Below are positions 17,801 through 26,800 of a stretch of 64,000 nt of DNA, piece by piece. The stretch lies in assembly GCA_964106645.2 (NCBI GenBank), contig OZ067046.1, one strand, 5' to 3'. Within the stretch, counting starts at the first letter, position 1, and every line of letters begins with the position of its first letter. The translations under genes and the position numbers were made by a program. The notes beneath the pieces are model-generated. The model was not told the DNA's origin. It did no database searches and saw only the letters and a list, made by a program, of their open reading frames with translations. The stretch is from Podarcis pityusensis. Lineage: Eukaryota.

Positions 17801-20800
17801 GGCCATTATATTATTGGTGAAAATATACCAGCCTTACCTTAATCAAGTTCAACAAGCTTGCCTGTTTTGATTAAGAAAAAATGCAAGTGAAAAAGAAGTT
17901 ATAGTAAACTATTACATGATATTATTTCACCTCTGTGCACACAAATATTCAATGAAATAAGACAAAAAATAATCCTAGAAATTAATACTGTTAATAAAGG
18001 TGTATATATACAATGCTGTGTATTCGTAGTTCAAAAACCCCCGAAGCTATCTCAGTATATTTAAATAATTACTAGTTACCAAAGTATTTTATTTAAAAGT
18101 TCTTGTAATGATTGCATAAGTGGCCTTTCATGCTGTGTTGAATATGGATTCTGAATGTACAGCTGAACTTGCAGAACGTTTTCTTTCTAGCTTCAGTTAG
18201 TATTTCATATTGCATGAATGAAGAAATTATGTTACACATATTGAGGAGAGAGCAAATATAAATTCCAGGAAAATGAGACAGATCATAGTTCTACAAACTA
18301 GTTGATTTTATATCTGTCCATAAATTGTTGTTAACATTCTGTTCAGATTTGGTAGGACAAAATATTTAGCAAATGATTATTTGAAACCTTATTTATGTAA
18401 TCGCTATTGACACCACATCTCAAGTATGCACTTCGAAACTACATGAGAACTAATGTATCGTGTGTGTATGTTGGGAATAATTATTTTTGTAAAGAAGTAA
18501 TCAGATTGTTTATCACTATCTGAACCAAATCTATTGTATTTTTGTGGATAGCGATCACAAAGATTTGAGTTTTTAAATTAATATTATTTTATACTACTGC
18601 TAAGGAGCAACAAGCATTGAAAAGTATGATCTCCGTACCAATATGTGGACTCCTGTAGCAAACATGAATGGAAGAAGACTACAATTTGGAGTAGCAGTAT
18701 TAGACGATAAGTTGTATGTTGTTGGTGGTAGAGATGGACTGAAAACACTGAATACAGTGGAGTGTTACAACCCAAAAACAAAAACTTGGAGTGTGATGCC
18801 ACCTATGTCCACTCACCGACATGGTCTGGGTATGTATCTTTTTTTATAACTAAAAGCAAGATATGTGGCTGTTGATTTAAAGCAGAGTCCCGTGCCCAGC
18901 GGAAGGATGAGGAGTACGTGCTGCATACTCTTGGTTGCTTTATTTATAGTTCAAAGCTGGTATATTACAGAAAGACATCTTGCCTCTGCCGGAGCAGAAA
19001 ATGCATCCTCTCTCCCTGACAGCTCGGAGAGAGTCACAAAGTGAAAAACAGGAAACCAGTGTACGTCACATCCAGTCTCCCTTTCCCGTGAGAAACTCCA
19101 ACAGTACAGACTGTGGAATGTAAACACCTGTCTCGTGACAAGCCCTTTCGCTGCACAGTGAAGGTAAAGCAGAAACCAACATCCTCCCCCTTTCTGTGAA
19201 CATCACTGGGCAGCGTGTTCGTACAATATCAGTACAAACCCAACTTCTGCACATAGGTACAGTGTTGATCCCTCGATACAATCTTGGACAATACATCAGC
19301 AGGAATTTCATTACCTGGCATATAGGACACCGTTATGAGTCCCTTCTGAATACATTCCCTAGCATGCTGCAACTTTAATTGCAAGTGCTTCGTGCTTTGC
19401 TTACAACCTTCAGACTTCAGCAAAGCCAAACATGCTTTGTTGTCCTGGTAAACCTGGATTGGACATTTGACAGGAATTTTCATATCTTTGCACAATTGTA
19501 TTAACCATTCACAATCCTTAAGTGAATACGATAGTGCATTCAGTTCGGCTTCACAAGTACTTAAACTAACTGTTGTTTGCTTCTTGCATGACCAATCAAA
19601 CAGACCTTGATTGTACATGTAGCAAACTCCAGACATACTTTTCCTGTCTGTAGTGTCACTTCCAAAACTTGCATCTGCAAATATCTCAAGACCACCAGAC
19701 TTCTGATTGTTAAATCTCAGTCTGTAATGCATAGTGCCTTTCAAATACCGCGCTATGCGTTTCAGAGCTTTCCAATCCTTGACACTAGGATTGTTGACTT
19801 GTCTGCTTAGCAAATTACAGCTAACAGCAATGTCTGGTCTTGAACATCTGGCAATGAAGTTTAGCTTGCCTAGCACACTTCTGTACAGTGTAGTGTCAGA
19901 AAATGCTTCTTCAGTGTCATCTACCTGATAACCTGTTGTCATCGGTGTGTCTACAGGGTTAGCATCCATCAGATTTAGTTTGCTTAACACATCAGCAATT
20001 TTCCGTGACTGGTGTACTAGAATGTTACCATCTTGATCTCTCTCTATTTCCAGAGAGAGGTAGTTGTTTACCTCACCAAGATCTTTCATGTCAAAGTGCT
20101 CTTTCAGTTGAGCTAGGGCGTTATTGTACATTGCGACATCTTTCCAAAAGAATAATAAATCATCAACATAAAACAAACAGTACAGTTTCTTTTGCCCCTC
20201 CTCTTTGACAAATACACATGGATCAGCTTTTCCTTGCTGAAAACCTAGAGAAAACAATACTTCAGTGAGTTTTGTGTGCCAACACCGTGCACTTTGTTTG
20301 AGACCATAAAGGGATTTCTTCAGAGCACAAACAAATCCCTGTTTTACCTGTACGCCATCAGGTGGAAGCATATAAAGTGATTCATCTAGAGATCCGTACA
20401 GAAAAGCTGTATTAATATCATGGTGACTAATGTGTAGATTTTCCTCTGCAGCTAGCTTGAGCATAAGCCTAATGCTTTCATATCTCACTGTGGGTGAATA
20501 GGTCTCGTGATAGTCTTCACCTGGTACCTGTGCAAAACCTCTGGCTACCAATCTGGCTTTGTGTCTGACTATCTTGCCATTTTGATCTGTCTTCGCTTTG
20601 AAGACCCATTTGCTTCCAAGCAGTTTCATTCCTGGAACTACTGGAACTAGCTCCCATGTTTTGTTCCTTTCTAAGGAATCAAGCTCAGCCTTCATGGCAT
20701 TTAACCATGGCTCAGCTTCCTTTGAATCCAAACCCTGGATTTCTTGGAAACTTGAAGGTTCAAATACCTTCTTGGAGCTTTTAACAGCTGTTACTGCTAT

Positions 20801-23800
20801 CGTAGCAAACTCATCAGCAAATCTCTTTGGAGGTCTGCCTTTTGTGGCTCTCTGTGACCTACGAATTAGCCTTAAGTCTTCAACACTCTCCTCTTCCTTC
20901 TTAGGAGAAAAACGACCTACTGTGAACAATGGTTCCTCCAATTCTTGATCAGAGCTTTCAGAGGGTCGCATAGAGGCTTTCGCACTCTTGAAATCCTCTG
21001 AATCACCCGATTCAGTTTCAGATTCAGACTCAGAACCTTCATCAGTGGGTGTGGGTTGTTGTGGTTGCTTTTGACTATCCTCAGTCTCATCACCGTCATC
21101 AGGATAACATTGGAAAATTCCCACATTCTCCCCCCACTTTGCATTGTACTCAACACTTCTCGTGAGCTTAATTGTCTTAGAGTCAGTCATCATTATTCTG
21201 TAAGACCCTTTCTGATAACCTAGAAAGATACCATGCAATCCACGCTTGTCTAACTTGGAGTTTTGTGGTGAGCGAACCCACATGTCAGAACCAAATATTT
21301 TCATGTGTTTGATGTATGGCTTCTTGCCAAACATCTTCTCATAGGGGGTACAACCAATCGCTGAAGATAACCTGCGATTGTAAGTGTAAACAAAACACGA
21401 GAGAGATTCGGCCCAATAACTCTCTGGAAGATTGGCATCATGCAGCAAGGTTTTTAACCCTTGAAGCAATGTCTGATTTGCCCGTTCCGCAAGTCCATTC
21501 TGCCATGGCGAGCGAGGACTAGACAAATCGTGTTGAATTCCTTTCTCAGTCAGAAAAGCTTCAAACTGCTGAGAAGTGAATTCTCCCCCGCGATCAGTGA
21601 AAAGAGTCTTTATCTTCTTACCATGCACATTTTCCAACCAAGCACAGAATTCCTTGAACCTAGGAAAAGCCTCTGATTTCTGCTTGAGATTGTACACAAA
21701 AATATATCTAGAAAATGCATCAATGAGAACCATGAAGTACCTATTTCCACCCAAAGAGGGCGCTAGTGGTCCAACTAAATCAGCATGAACAACCTGGTAT
21801 GGTTCTGTAGCTTGCCTACTAGACACCTTACCTTTCGCAGCCATTTTCACCTTGTTTGCTGCGCATGCTTTGCACTTCATGTGGTACCTGCAGGGTTTAA
21901 TAGTCATACCTTCAACCAAGGCAGGCATTTTAGATACTGCCTCAAAATGCAAATGACCAAATTTTCGGTGAAAATCATGAATACATTCTGCATGCAAACT
22001 TTTGTTAGAACCTGCAATGCAACAAGTGTCATCCTTTTCAACATCATCATAATACAAAACAAACAAACGATCAACATATTCAGCATGCAATACATAATCA
22101 TTTTTCTTTGTGATGATGCACTTCTTGTTCTTGAAGGAAACGTCAATGTTCCGCTCATTCAGCTGTCCAACGCTGAGCAGATTATGTTTGGCGTCTGGCA
22201 CGTAAAGCACATTTTGTATCGATAAGTCCAAACTGTGAAGAACAACAGTTCCGTAGCCTTTACTGGGAATAGTGTGGTCATCCGCCTGGTGAATCGCACC
22301 TTCCTGCGGTGTAAAAGACACAAACAGTCTCTTATCGTTGCACATGTGGTGGGTTGCCGCTGAATCAACAACGAAGAAAGATCTAGACGTCTTCTGGACC
22401 TCTGCAACCTTTGGAGTGAAGCGTGAAACCATAGCCTTGTGCTGCGTTGTCCTAGACACCGGACCTTTGCCTTTGCCTCGGCCTTTTCCGCGCGATGAGC
22501 TTTCGCTGCGCTGCTCTGTCTTGGCCCTGGGATATCTGCATTCCCTCTTCATATGGCCTAGACGTCCACACGAGTAGCATTTCACTGCCTTCAAAGCTTT
22601 GGCGCCATCTGGTGGTTCCACTGCACTATGGGATGACGTCTGTGAAGACTCCCCCTTGCCCATGCAGCTAGCACCCCGGCGATCTGCTTCATTTAAAATC
22701 ACGGCAGTTACATAGTCCACTGTTAGCTGAGCGGTTGGTTGCACAGCAATCTGGGTTGCAACAGACTCCCAACCTGAACCCAAAGATTGTAGTATCATGA
22801 AAGAATACACAGCCTCTGGAAAGTTGAGTCCTCTCTGTTGCAGCTCATGTCTCAGATTTTGCATCTCCATCAGATGTAAACGCACATCTCCACCTTCAGC
22901 AAGAGCCATATTATGCAGCTTGTTAAAGTAAAACATAGTGGACCCAGCTTCTGTCCTTAAGTGAGCTTCTCTCAAAGCTTCCCAAATTTCTCTGGCTGAG
23001 GTCTTATCACGCAATAGACAGAGCTCTTCTGGGGATACTATCAATGTAAGAGTTCCCCTTGCTTTGGAATCCTTAGCTTCCCATGCATCTGTAACTGGAA
23101 CTGGGGGGGTTTCTGTAATCACCTCATACAAACCCTCTTTCCGCAGAATTGCCTCTGCATACAGAACCCAGTCCGCGTAATTTTTCTTGTTGAGCTTAGG
23201 AATCCCACAAGCATCCTGAAGGGCCATCATGACTCTGGCATTAGCCTTCAGCGTCATATATGCTGCTTCAAATCTTGCTGCGTCACTGCTGCAGCTGCCT
23301 TATTCCAAAAGCGCACTTAAAAGTTACTTTCGATTTCCCCAGCATAGTAACTTGTGCCTGGGAGCCTTTTGCCTATTCCCGGCAAAACCGGCTTTGAAAG
23401 TTCAAAGTCCAGCCATAAAGCCATTAACTAGAAGCTGGCAGGCTGCCCGGAGCAGTAGCACATACCTCATCAATCACTTTTACGCGCAGAGCAGATTCCG
23501 ATCCGATCTGTCCCTCTGCATTCCGATCCTTTGCCGGCACTCCGATTCGACTTCTGGAGCCCATAACCACGTGTTGATTTAAAGCAGAGTCCCGTGCCCA
23601 GCGGAAGGATGAGGAGTACGTGCTGCATACTCTTGGTTGCTTTATTTATAGTTCAAAGCTGGTATATTACAGAAAGACATCTTGCCTCTGCCGGAGCAGA
23701 AAATGCATCCTCTCTCCCTGACAGCTCGGAGAGAGTCACAAAGTGAAAAACAGGAAACCAGTGTACGTCACATCCAGTCTCCCTTTCCCGTGAGAAACTC

Positions 23801-26800
23801 CAACAGTACAGACTGTGGAATGTAAACACCTGTCTCGTGACAAGCCCTTTCGCTGCACAGTGAAGGAAAGCAGAAACCAACAGTGGCGTGATCAGCTCAT
23901 TTCAATGAAATGCTTCCTTGAAATTGCTACCGTATTTTTCACCCTATAGGACGCACTTTTCCCCCTCCAAAAATGAAGGGGAAATGTGTGTGCGTCCTAT
24001 GGGGCGAATGCAGGCTTTTGCTGAAGCCTGGAGAGCGAGAGGGGTCGGTGCGCACCGACCCCTCTCGCTCTCCAGGCTTCAGGAAGCTATCCGCAAGCCT
24101 TGGGAGCTCCGCGGGAGTTTGTGTCGGGCTCCCAAGGCTTGCGGATAGCAGCCTCCCAACCTGACCTGGTTTGGAGGCTGGCGGTGGGGAAAGCAGCGCT
24201 TCTCCCGACCGCCAGCCCCACAAGCTCGGGGGACAGCGGGGAGGCGGAGCGCGCCTTCCCGCTGTTCCCCGACCTGGTTTGCAGGCTGGCGGTGGGAGCT
24301 GCCTGCATCCCGAAGCCTGGGGCGCACTGAGCCACGCGCCCCAGGCTTCGGGAAGATATCCACAAGCCTGGGGAGACCGGCGCAACTTCCCGCCGGGCTC
24401 CCTAGGCTTGCGGTTAGCAGCCTGTTCTGGGGGCTGGGGTCGGGGGAAGCTTGGGCTTCCCCCACCCCAGCCCTGCGCCTGGGGGGGAAATATTATTTCC
24501 CCCCAAAAAAACTAGGTGCGCCCTATGGGCCGAAAAATACGGTACTTGGGCTTCTTTGGTACATTCGATATCAGTAGTAGGCAATTTGTAATAGACAAAA
24601 ATCAGAAACAAACTTTAAAGGTTTTAATTGTCATCTCCAGCATTATGCTTTGTTATGTGTCATGCTTGGGAAGTAAAAGTATGGTCACTATGTTGCATGT
24701 AGGTATGTGTAGTTATCTCAGACACTTTTTATATGGCATATACCCCATATTGAGATTGACTTTCCTTTGAAGAGTGGGAGAAAGTCACTGGACCTTCTTT
24801 TGACAGAAAGAAGACTGGAAACATTATAGCAGTCAAAACCTAATGGTGCCAAAACCAAGAGACAGTCTTCACCCCACCCCTTTTTCCATTTCAGTAATTT
24901 TGAGTGAGGAACCGAAGAGTTTTCATATTCTTAATTGGCAGTTGCAGGATAGGGATATTATAGAAATATTGTGATATGTCTGCCTGTCAAGGCTCAAGTG
25001 TTTCTCTGTTCCTGTACATCAGCGGCTTTTGAACTTTGGGGCGAAATTATCAGGATTCTTAAATGAGGTGATCAATGAACAGTAGGCAGGCTTTCCTGAG
25101 AGGCAGTTTATCCATCCCCATAAACATTGCAGCCTCGGTTCCTTTGGCAGAAAATTAATGAATTAATTACTAAAGGAATGAATGAATGATCCTTTGAAAA
25201 TATGTTGTAATGTAGTGGAGATACGGATGGACAAGATGTTGAATGTATTGTAGGATGCCTTTCAATAGTTTGGCCAGGGTTCCATCTGAGTCTCAAAATA
25301 CTCTGTAGAAGCCCTAGTTCTGATTTCCTCATCAGAAAAATAAATGAGGAAAGCATTTTTGATGATGTGACCGTTTGAAACCACTGCGGTATGTCATAAA
25401 CAATTGGGCCATTTCACATTCTGAAATAATAGTGTCTTCTTAACTCAAAGGGGTGGCAGTACTGGAAGGTCCTATGTATGCTGTAGGAGGACATGATGGC
25501 TGGAGCTATCTGAATACCGTCGAAAGATGGGATCCACAGGCACGTCAGTGGAACTTTGTGGCTAGCATGTCAACCCCAAGGAGCACAGTGGGTGTAGCAG
25601 TATTAAGTGGAAAGTAAGTAGGACTAAAGAGAGAAATAAGGGCAAATATTCCATAACATTTTACTCAAAACTCGTATATATAAAGGAAATTTAGTAACAC
25701 TGGAATGATGTCATCTACCAGAAGTTCAGAGTGTTAGGCTTTTGAATGATGCTGCGTATGCTTGTTTTTGTCCTATCCACTTCTTGTTAACATATTCATT
25801 GGGTATCAGGAAACATCCAGTACTCATTAAATCCTTACTGTTAATTTCCTCTTGGATGTTGAATGGTTTCAGGACTGCAGGCGGGACTTCTTTTGTCCTA
25901 GAAATGGTTCCAGTAATTTGACTTAGTCAAATCCAGCAATGTATTTTTAATAACAAATTGATAATGCTGTATAAAATCCTGAAAACTCAAATGGTAACAT
26001 AAGCAATTGTCTCTAGCAGTAAGATGGCTGAAGAGAAACTGAAAATTTTATCCATTTTAGGAAAGAAAATCAACAAGTTCTTGTTTTTTTCTGAGAAATA
26101 TTATTCCTTCCTTGAAGTATCGGAATAGCTATCATTGTGGGAAACCCTCTTACTGTGGTTTTTTTATAATGCACTTTTTCCTAAATTATATGCTTCCTTT
26201 TTTGATATTTTTGAATTTTTTTGCATCTTTGTTTATTTAGAAATAGAAAAGGACCACACAAGTAATGGGATGAAAAATGTAACATATATAAAACTTTCAA
26301 ATCTGTTGTATAAATGAGCCCATAAATGTGGTTAGAATTACATTATTACTTTCAGTTTTAAATGCAACATCAGAGGACAAGCTGCACCACCTACTGAGGT
26401 GGAAATGAATTGAGACAAAGCTGTTGTTTAAAACTGCTACTTTGTTACCAAGAAACTATAGGTAGGTTTTAAGAGAAGCATCAGAAAATGGGTGAGACTC
26501 TTTCAGAAATAGGATCCCAAGAGAGTTCTCTTTGAAGCAAAGGCAGCAGCAGATTTCGTTGTCCCTGAGGAAGATTTTAAAGTGTTAGACTTAATGCTAT
26601 TTTTATTCTGCAGTAAGCCATCTAATTCAATGCCTACTCGAATATTTTGTGTGTGTGTGTTCAGAAAGTATTTCAACCATGTATTTGTATGCTTACAGGT
26701 TATATGCAGTTGGTGGTCGAGATGGAAGTTCTTGTCTCAAATCTGTAGAATGCTTTGATCCTCATACTAACAAGTGGACACTCTGTGCTCAGATGTCAAA

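What the first reader, a model, noticed from the sequence alone, without database searches (positions are those of the whole stretch)
18870..23882. Intact, very recent and potentially active Ty1/copia retrotransposon in a lizard genome
Seen: LTRs of 312 and 311 bp identical except one indel, a perfect GTGGC TSD, PBS, PPT and one uninterrupted 1342-aa ORF. The CCHC knuckle, integrase HHCC and D,D(35)E, RT YVDD and RNase H acidic residues are all present in copia order (PR-IN-RT-RH). Established: copia elements are common in plants, fungi and insects but scarce in vertebrates and effectively missing from mammals and birds. Inference: a transposition-competent copy of a recently active amniote copia family. 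It may be polymorphic in the population, and is a candidate for horizontal acquisition or for a poorly described squamate lineage.
Basis: partly seen in the sequence, partly recalled or inferred. Interest (0 to 1): 0.85.

Follow-up and report, generated by a model that had tools for sequence, protein, structure and literature searches.

The report
Intact young copia retrotransposon in lizard
This is a real, structurally complete and recently inserted Ty1/copia jumping gene in a wall-lizard-type genome. It belongs to a copia lineage shared by distant lizard families, and such elements are already known to be active in squamates, so it is a well-preserved but ordinary find.

Summary
A 5,013-bp LTR retrotransposon lies on the minus strand at 18870-23882. 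Its LTRs are 311 and 312 bp and differ by one extra A. It has a 5-bp target-site duplication (GTGGC on the + strand), a primer site, a polypurine tract and one open 1342-aa Gag-PR-IN-RT-RH frame with all catalytic motifs.

- A 96.9%-identical but older, frameshifted copy sits in Podarcis lilfordi. A near-complete relative (60% aa identity in RT-RNase H) sits in the anguid Elgaria.
- These two, with two unnamed contigs, form one clade (support 100) on a long stem.
- A search of 1.84 billion protein representatives found one hit above 41% identity: a member of that clade (80%). So recent horizontal acquisition has no support.
- Papers already report polymorphic Copia insertions in Anolis, a Copia insertion behind corn-snake amelanism, expressed Copia in sea snakes and over 1,140 full-length copies in tuatara.
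- Identical 311-bp LTRs only bound the age to under about 2-6 My.

The scan's notes list another intact copia and RT-less copia derivatives elsewhere in this genome. I did not check those notes.

The parts
18865..18869 (.). Target-site duplication, copy next to the 3' LTR (GTGGC on +, GCCAC on the element's strand)
18870..19181 (-). 3' LTR, 312 bp, TGTTG...CAACA termini. It carries one extra A relative to the 5' LTR and to both LTRs of the P. lilfordi copy. The only TATAAA and the only AATAAA overlap at 18939-18948.
19182..19195 (-). Polypurine tract AGAAAGGGGGAGGA, directly upstream of the 3' LTR
19229..23257 (-). Single uninterrupted 1342-aa Gag-PR-IN-RT-RNase H polyprotein ORF (stop codon included)
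22673..23155 (-). Gag capsid domain (aa 35-195, Retrotran_gag_2). It matches the solved Drosophila Copia VLP protein 8vvw at E 2e-8.
22538..22579 (-). CCHC zinc knuckle (aa 227-240)
22148..22375 (-). Aspartic protease (aa 295-370, Pol_BBD), active-site D-S-A at aa 298-300
21143..22066 (-). Integrase (aa 398-705): HHCC finger (H430, H435, C462, C465), core D493 / D555 / E591 (D,D35E) and an SH3-like domain. Its best solved relative is Ty1 integrase 7z0h (E 2e-15).
19937..20665 (-). Reverse transcriptase (aa 865-1107, RVT_2, E 1.4e-69), YVDD at aa 1030-1033
19283..19690 (-). RNase H (about aa 1190-1325) with acidic residues D1195, E1237, D1272, D1321
23554..23569 (-). Primer-binding site TGGTTATGGGCTCCAG. 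It is complementary to the anticodon stem-loop region of initiator tRNA-Met rather than to its 3' end. The P. lilfordi copy has the uninterrupted 14-nt match GGTTATGGGCCCAG. This copy carries one extra T inside it.
   Evidence: antisense tRNAiMet probe sequences in PMC5648532 and 10.1101/2024.01.30.575011
23258..23571 (-). 314-nt leader between the 5' LTR and the start codon (contains the primer site and 7 upstream ATGs)
23572..23882 (-). 5' LTR, 311 bp; TATAAATAAA at 23641-23650
23883..23887 (.). Target-site duplication, copy next to the 5' LTR (GTGGC on +)

Best explanation
Window 18870-23882 (minus strand) is a genuine, structurally complete and evolutionarily young insertion of an autonomous Ty1/copia (Pseudoviridae-type) LTR retrotransposon in a lacertid, Podarcis-like genome. 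Its family also occurs in Podarcis lilfordi. It belongs to a copia lineage found in distantly related lizard families, which is most simply explained by vertical descent within squamates.

Inferred mechanism, which is the standard copia cycle:
1. The 5' LTR drives a genomic RNA that ends in the 3' LTR.
2. The single ORF yields a Gag-PR-IN-RT-RNase H polyprotein, which the protease cuts.
3. Gag, a homologue of the Drosophila copia capsid, forms particles.
4. Minus-strand DNA is primed at a site complementary to the anticodon region of initiator tRNA-Met, that is, by a 5' tRNA half as in Drosophila copia.
5. Plus-strand DNA is primed at the polypurine tract.
6. The D,D35E integrase inserts the DNA with a 5-bp staggered cut, which made the GTGGC duplication.

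Shown here: the anatomy, the intact frame and motifs, the youth of the insertion, its relatives and purifying selection on the family. Inferred: every step of activity, including whether this copy or its family still moves.
For: Anatomy: with motifs.

Family assignment: Pfam RVT_2 1.4e-69, Retrotran_gag_2 and rve in PR-IN-RT order. Solved-structure relatives are the Copia VLP protein 8vvw and Ty1 integrase 7z0h.

Youth: 0 substitutions and 1 indel between the LTRs.

A real family with a history:
- A P. lilfordi copy at L002:15505-20506 is 96.9% identical over all 5,013 bp.
- That copy has its own CTGGT duplication, an LTR pair with K2P distance 0.023, and a frame broken by frameshifts.
- dN/dS between the two copies is 0.25.

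Squamate lineage:
- Elgaria L003:2901-7852 has LTRs 97.1% alike and tblastn cover of aa 19-1342.
- In the tree, the window element, P. lilfordi, Elgaria and two unnamed contigs form one clade with SH-aLRT 100 on a stem of 1.11.
- Other hits are 43% identical or less. In the exhaustive search one representative exceeds 41%, P0161 at 80%, and it lies inside the clade.

Primer site: it matches antisense tRNAiMet sequences printed in PMC5648532 and 10.1101/2024.01.30.575011. Drosophila copia is primed by a tRNAiMet 5' half (Kikuchi 1986, as cited in PMC10275265).
Against: - Both junctions, polymorphism and expression are therefore unverified.
- Only one copy lies in the window.
- Identical 311-bp LTRs resolve age only to about 0.7-2 My per substitution. 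'Very recent' may therefore mean up to a few million years, and an intact frame is expected at that age without any current activity.
- This copy's primer site has one extra T that interrupts the 14-nt tRNA complement seen in the P. lilfordi copy. The effect is unknown.
- The only TATAAA and the only AATAAA in the LTR overlap, so U3/R/U5 cannot be assigned from motifs.
- The hosts of two clade members (an ENA metagenome contig and a Logan contig) are unknown.
- Reference copia families of Anolis, snakes, tuatara, fish and amphibians were not available for the tree.
Confidence: 0.9

Rival explanations
1. Intact relic. The copy is structurally complete only because it is young (up to a few million years old). 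It is fixed and silenced, and the family no longer transposes.
For: Zero substitutions in 311 bp is compatible with ages up to about 2-6 My at the 95% bound, under assumed rates of 0.8-2.4e-9 per site per year. The only other same-family copy examined, in P. lilfordi, is dead with several frameshifts. The primer site carries an extra T relative to the tRNA complement. No transcript or polymorphism data exist.
Against: dN/dS of 0.25 shows that the lineages leading to the two copies were replicating under selection. The scan's unchecked notes list another intact young copia and recently mobile RT-less derivatives in this genome. Copia is demonstrably active in other squamates (PMC7561263, PMC4657000, PMC8872380).
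Confidence: 0.35
2. Recent horizontal acquisition of the family by lacertids from an arthropod, a parasite or another non-squamate donor.
For: The nearest non-squamate neighbours in the tree are from a fly, a spider and a nematode. The distribution of copia across tetrapods is patchy (PMC4350176).
Against: Those neighbours are only 37-43% identical in RT-RNase H and are separated by a stem of 1.11 substitutions per site. The search of 1.84 billion representatives found no donor-like sequence: the one hit above 41% lies inside the squamate-associated clade. Relatives at 60% (Elgaria), 70% and 80% identity give a graded series, as expected from long residence in squamates.
Confidence: 0.05
3. 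Assembly artefact: a chimeric or duplicated join that only mimics a full-length element, or LTRs made identical by polishing.
For: No reads could be laid on the locus. The single LTR difference is a 1-bp indel, a typical long-read error class.
Against: A perfect 5-bp duplication flanks exact TG...CA LTR ends. The internal order is colinear over all 5,013 bp with an independent copy in another assembly. The flanks are unique sequence.
Confidence: 0.03

Closest known systems
Drosophila melanogaster copia (type element of Ty1/copia)
   Same: Single Gag-PR-IN-RT-RNase H ORF, a 5-bp target duplication and TGTTG...CAACA LTR termini (the copia termini are from my own knowledge). The primer site is complementary to the anticodon region of initiator tRNA-Met, implying priming by a 5' tRNA half. 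Gag is detectably homologous to the solved Copia VLP protein 8vvw.
   Different: The host is an amniote. Identity to any insect copia-type protein in the databases is about 40% in RT-RNase H. Whether Gag excess is made by splicing, as in copia, is unknown.
Copia families of Anolis carolinensis (Repbase Copia-n_ACar) and the Copia insertion in corn-snake OCA2
   Same: Squamate hosts, the same superfamily, and documented recent activity: 1,962 polymorphic insertions in Anolis (PMC7561263) and a 5.8-kb Copia insertion behind amelanism (PMC4657000).
   Different: The family here is documented only in Podarcis.
Copy in Podarcis lilfordi chromosome OX395128.1 (L002:15505-20506), partly annotated as hypothetical protein CAI5771367.1
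   Same: The same family: 96.9% nt identity end to end, with the same primer-site type.
   Different: It is older (LTR pair K2P 0.023) and its frame is split by frameshifts. Its LTRs differ from the window's by 8.0% while the ORF differs by only 1.56%.
Mtanga-like Ty1/copia of tuatara
   Same: An abundant full-length copia in a lepidosaur (10.1101/867069).
   Different: Clade assignment of the present element to Mtanga, Hydra, copia or another GyDB clade was not testable here.
Yeast Ty1
   Same: The same superfamily and domain order. The integrase is the closest solved relative (7z0h, E 2e-15).
   Different: Ty1 uses a +1 frameshift between gag and pol and the 3' end of tRNAiMet. This element has one ORF and an internal tRNA site.

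Membership tests
Ty1/copia LTR retrotransposons (Pseudoviridae) | Pol domain order PR - IN - RT - RNase H (integrase upstream of RT) | tested here: met
   Pfam hits along the ORF: Pol_BBD 295-370, rve 484-584, RVT_2 865-1107. RNase H motifs 1193-1323.
Ty1/copia LTR retrotransposons (Pseudoviridae) | Copia-type reverse transcriptase (RVT_2) and copia-type Gag | tested here: met
   RVT_2 E 1.4e-69 and Retrotran_gag_2 E 9e-28, both above the curated cut-offs. Copia VLP protein 8vvw E 2e-8.
Ty1/copia LTR retrotransposons (Pseudoviridae) | Long terminal repeats with TG...CA ends flanked by a 5-bp target-site duplication | tested here: met
   311- and 312-bp LTRs, TGTTG...CAACA, GTGGC duplication.
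Ty1/copia LTR retrotransposons (Pseudoviridae) | Primer site complementary to initiator tRNA-Met next to the 5' LTR, and a polypurine tract next to the 3' LTR | tested here: met
   The primer-site core matches antisense tRNAiMet, with one extra T in this copy. The polypurine tract lies at 19182-19195.
Autonomous, currently active (transposition-competent) element | Intact ORF with all catalytic residues | tested here: met
Autonomous, currently active (transposition-competent) element | Sister copies with near-identical LTRs, insertion polymorphism, or full-length transcripts | not testable with these tools
There is no second copy in the window. The exact protein is not on record. Only unchecked scan notes mention other young copia copies.
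Horizontally transferred TE | Much higher identity to a sequence in a distant host than host divergence allows, or a patchy distribution that conflicts with host phylogeny | tested here: not met
   The one representative above 41% identity belongs to the lizard-associated clade. The clade holds both Lacertidae and Anguidae. Limit: TE proteins are under-represented in protein databases.
Named GyDB copia clade (Mtanga, Hydra, copia, 1731, GalEa and others) | Placement with reference elements in an RT or pol phylogeny | not testable with these tools
The tree of database hits only places it among animal copia.

The most novel reading that the evidence does not exclude
This copy represents a currently mobile, autonomous master family in Podarcis. 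It would still be generating polymorphic insertions and supplying RT in trans to the RT-less copia derivatives noted elsewhere in this genome. It would use the Drosophila-copia mode of priming by a cleaved 5' half of initiator tRNA. If so, that unusual priming mechanism would be an ancient, conserved option of animal copia elements, and it would switch within the squamate clade: a sister element uses the tRNA 3' end, and the Elgaria element uses neither.
Probability: 0.3. Interest if true: 0.4.

Novelty: new member of a known kind. Interest (0 to 1): 0.2.

Why it matters
It adds a cleanly delimited, full-length reference copy of a lacertid copia family. The Podarcis genome papers I could read report only a bulk 'LTR elements' percentage (PMC10214862, PMC12860763). 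The P. lilfordi annotation has turned a dead copy of the family into a spurious spliced gene model (CAI5771367.1). The copy could serve as a marker for insertion polymorphism in wall-lizard population genomics. It also gives a vertebrate example of half-tRNA priming to compare with Drosophila copia. It does not change the known picture: copia elements are lost in birds and mammals but alive in squamates.

Tried and rejected
- An exact-sequence look-up of the 1342-aa protein found no gene on record and no cluster.
- A scan of metagenome contigs with the RT-RNase H part matched 77 patterns, but none was a confirmed relative.
- I searched for a paralogous 'empty site' by joining the two flanks and comparing them with the window, L002 and L003. 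Nothing matched, so the flanks are unique.
- I looked for other copies or solo LTRs in the window and found none.
- I looked for host genes around the insertion. Eight ORFs of at least 184 aa had no Pfam hit. ARAGORN found no tRNA gene. Rfam gave two weak tRNA-like hits, probably SINE heads.
- The bacterial-type promoter and terminator scan is not informative for a vertebrate LTR.
- Endogenous retrovirus or Ty3/gypsy was rejected, because the RT is RVT_2 and the integrase precedes it.
- The host species of the window could not be fixed. Shared interspersed repeats with P. lilfordi are only 88-92% identical and do not decide it.
The broken copies were only described.
Full report
**Observation**

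The repeat finder returns one family in 18000-24800: direct repeats at 18870-19167 and 23572-23869, 100% identical. Reading both ends on the minus strand and aligning them gives full LTRs of 312 bp (18870-19181) and 311 bp (23572-23882). They begin TGTTGG and end TCAACA. They differ only by one extra A near the start of the 3' LTR.

The five bases outside each LTR are the same: GCCAC on the element's strand, GTGGC on the + strand, at 18865-18869 and 23883-23887. A purine run, AGAAAGGGGGAGGA, abuts the 3' LTR (19182-19195). A TGG-initiated primer site starts two bases after the 5' LTR.

The only long ORF is 19229-23257 on the minus strand, 1342 aa. The element lies on the minus strand.

**Identity**

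Pfam places Retrotran_gag_2, zf-CCHC, Pol_BBD (protease), gag_pre-integrs, rve, SH3_retrovirus and RVT_2 (E 1.4e-69) along the protein in that order. A motif scan finds:
- the CCHC knuckle (227-240);
- protease D-S-A (298-300);
- integrase H-x4-H and C-x2-C;
- D493, D555 and E591, with exactly 35 residues between the last two;
- YVDD (1030-1033);
- four RNase H acidic residues.

Among solved structures, the integrase is closest to Ty1 integrase (7z0h, E 2e-15) and Gag is closest to the Drosophila Copia VLP protein (8vvw, E 2e-8). All tested defining features of Ty1/copia are met.

**Relatives**

The gag-protease part hits a Podarcis lilfordi 'hypothetical protein' (CAI5771367.1, P0121). The pairwise alignment shows that this protein is a mis-spliced gene model built from pieces of the same element, with blocks nearly identical.

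Its locus is GCA_947686815.1, OX395128.1, fetched as L002. It holds a full-length copy at L002:15505-20506 that aligns with the window element over all 5,013 bp at 96.9% identity. That copy has its own CTGGT duplication. Its LTRs differ by K2P 0.023. Its frame is split into several pieces by short indels. It is an older, dead member of the family.

Between the two copies the LTRs differ by 8.0%, the leader by 4.5% and the ORF by only 1.56%. In the ORF dS is 0.039, dN is 0.0097 and dN/dS is 0.25. The coding part has therefore evolved under purifying selection, as expected of a replicating family. The LTRs have turned over about five times faster.

More distant relatives are:
- an intact 1338-aa polyprotein on an ENA metagenome contig (P0001 / L001; 56% identity overall, 70% in RT-RNase H);
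- a 286-aa fragment on a Logan contig (P0161, 80%);
- an element in the anguid lizard Elgaria multicarinata (L003:2901-7852). Its LTRs are 97.1% alike, and tblastn covers aa 19-1342 in two frames at 45% (gag-IN) and 60% (RT-RNase H) identity.

In a maximum-likelihood tree of RT-RNase H these five form one clade (SH-aLRT 100) on a stem of 1.11 substitutions per site. The clade sits inside a group of animal copia sequences from a fly, a spider and a nematode.

All other database hits are 43% identical or less. An exhaustive HMMER pass over 1.84 billion representative proteins listed one sequence above 41% identity, P0161 at 80%, which lies inside the clade. I found no candidate donor for a recent horizontal transfer. 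A graded series of relatives in Lacertidae and Anguidae is what long residence in squamates predicts. The limits are these:
- TE proteins are under-represented in annotated proteomes.
- The hosts of two clade members are unknown.
- Reference copia families (Repbase, GyDB) were not available, so the element could not be assigned to a named clade.

**Age and activity**

With no substitution in 311 aligned LTR positions, the 95% upper bound on divergence is about 3/311. I assumed neutral rates of 0.8-2.4e-9 per site per year. These come from my own knowledge, not from a tool. They give an age under about 2-6 My, and one substitution is expected only every 0.7-2 My.

'Very recent' is therefore justified only at that resolution. 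An intact frame at that age is not independent evidence of current mobility.

The window holds no second copy or solo LTR. The exact protein is not on record in the protein collection.

The scan's own notes list another intact young copia and three RT-less copia derivatives on other pieces of this genome. These notes are unchecked and I treat them as leads only.

**Primer site**

After the 5' LTR the window reads CG-TGGTTATGGGCTCCAG. The P. lilfordi copy reads CG-TGGTTATGGGCCCAG.

An antisense probe to human initiator tRNA-Met, printed in PMC5648532, contains GGTTATGGGCCCAG internally and starts TGGTAGCAGAGG. A zebrafish anti-iMet probe contains the same core.

The Podarcis family's site is therefore complementary to the anticodon stem-loop region, not to the tRNA 3' end. 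This is the arrangement known from Drosophila copia, which is primed by a 5' half of tRNAiMet (Kikuchi 1986, as cited in PMC10275265).

The ENA relative instead carries TGGTAGCAGAGG, the complement of the tRNA 3' end. The Elgaria element shows neither.

The window copy has one extra T inside the 14-nt complement, and its effect is unknown. This agrees with the separate scan note s1-711432.

**What is known**

- Copia is absent from birds and mammals but present in other vertebrates, including reptiles (PMC4350176).
- Anolis carolinensis carries 1,962 polymorphic Copia insertions (PMC7561263).
- Corn-snake amelanism is associated with a 5.8-kb Copia insertion in OCA2 (PMC4657000).
- Copia is expanding and expressed in hydrophiine snakes (PMC8872380).
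- The Podarcis genome papers give only bulk LTR percentages.

The claim that such elements are scarce or poorly described in squamates therefore does not hold in general. This particular lacertid family has not, to my knowledge from the searchable papers, been individually described.

**Verdict**

This is a real and very well preserved young copia insertion, a new member of a known kind. Horizontal transfer is unsupported. Current activity is plausible but untested.

Noticed in passing
window 24018-24085, with inverted copies of a GTGCGTCCTAT...GGG motif at about 23930-23957 and 23990-24013: A 68-bp near-perfect spacerless palindrome lies about 130 bp outside the copia 5' LTR. It may be a fold-back fragment of another mobile element. 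The scan's notes mention Penelope-derived palindromes elsewhere in this genome.
   Followed up: partly
window 18870-23882 versus L002:15505-20506: Between the two Podarcis-family copies the LTRs differ by 8.0% and the leader by 4.5%, but the ORF differs by only 1.56%. This suggests fast LTR turnover, or recombination between subfamilies that share one coding region.
   Followed up: partly
L001:480-510, L002:15816-15835, L003:3313-3340: Primer-site type varies within the lizard-associated copia clade. The Podarcis family uses an internal (anticodon-region) tRNAiMet complement. The ENA contig uses the tRNAiMet 3'-end complement. The Elgaria element has no recognisable tRNAiMet site.
   Followed up: partly
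L002:3001-19192 (P. lilfordi gene model CAI5771367.1) and L003:6001-12163 (Elgaria LOC134395383): Two annotated 'proteins' are spurious spliced models stitched from transposon pieces: copia fragments in both, and LINE endonuclease/RT domains as well in the Elgaria model.
   Followed up: partly
window 23641-23650 and 18939-18948: The only TATAAA and the only AATAAA in each LTR overlap (TATAAATAAA, LTR positions 233-242). Promoter and poly(A) signals cannot both be read from motifs without leaving almost no R region. RNA ends are needed.
   Followed up: no
window 60644-60717 (+) and 36858-36914 (+): There are two weak tRNA-like Rfam hits (34 and 31 bits), while ARAGORN finds no tRNA gene. They are probably tRNA-derived SINE heads.
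   Followed up: no
window 38162-38877 and 61285-61669: An interspersed repeat is shared with P. lilfordi L002 (90-92% identity) and with Elgaria L003 (70-72% identity), so it is an old squamate-wide repeat family.
   Followed up: no
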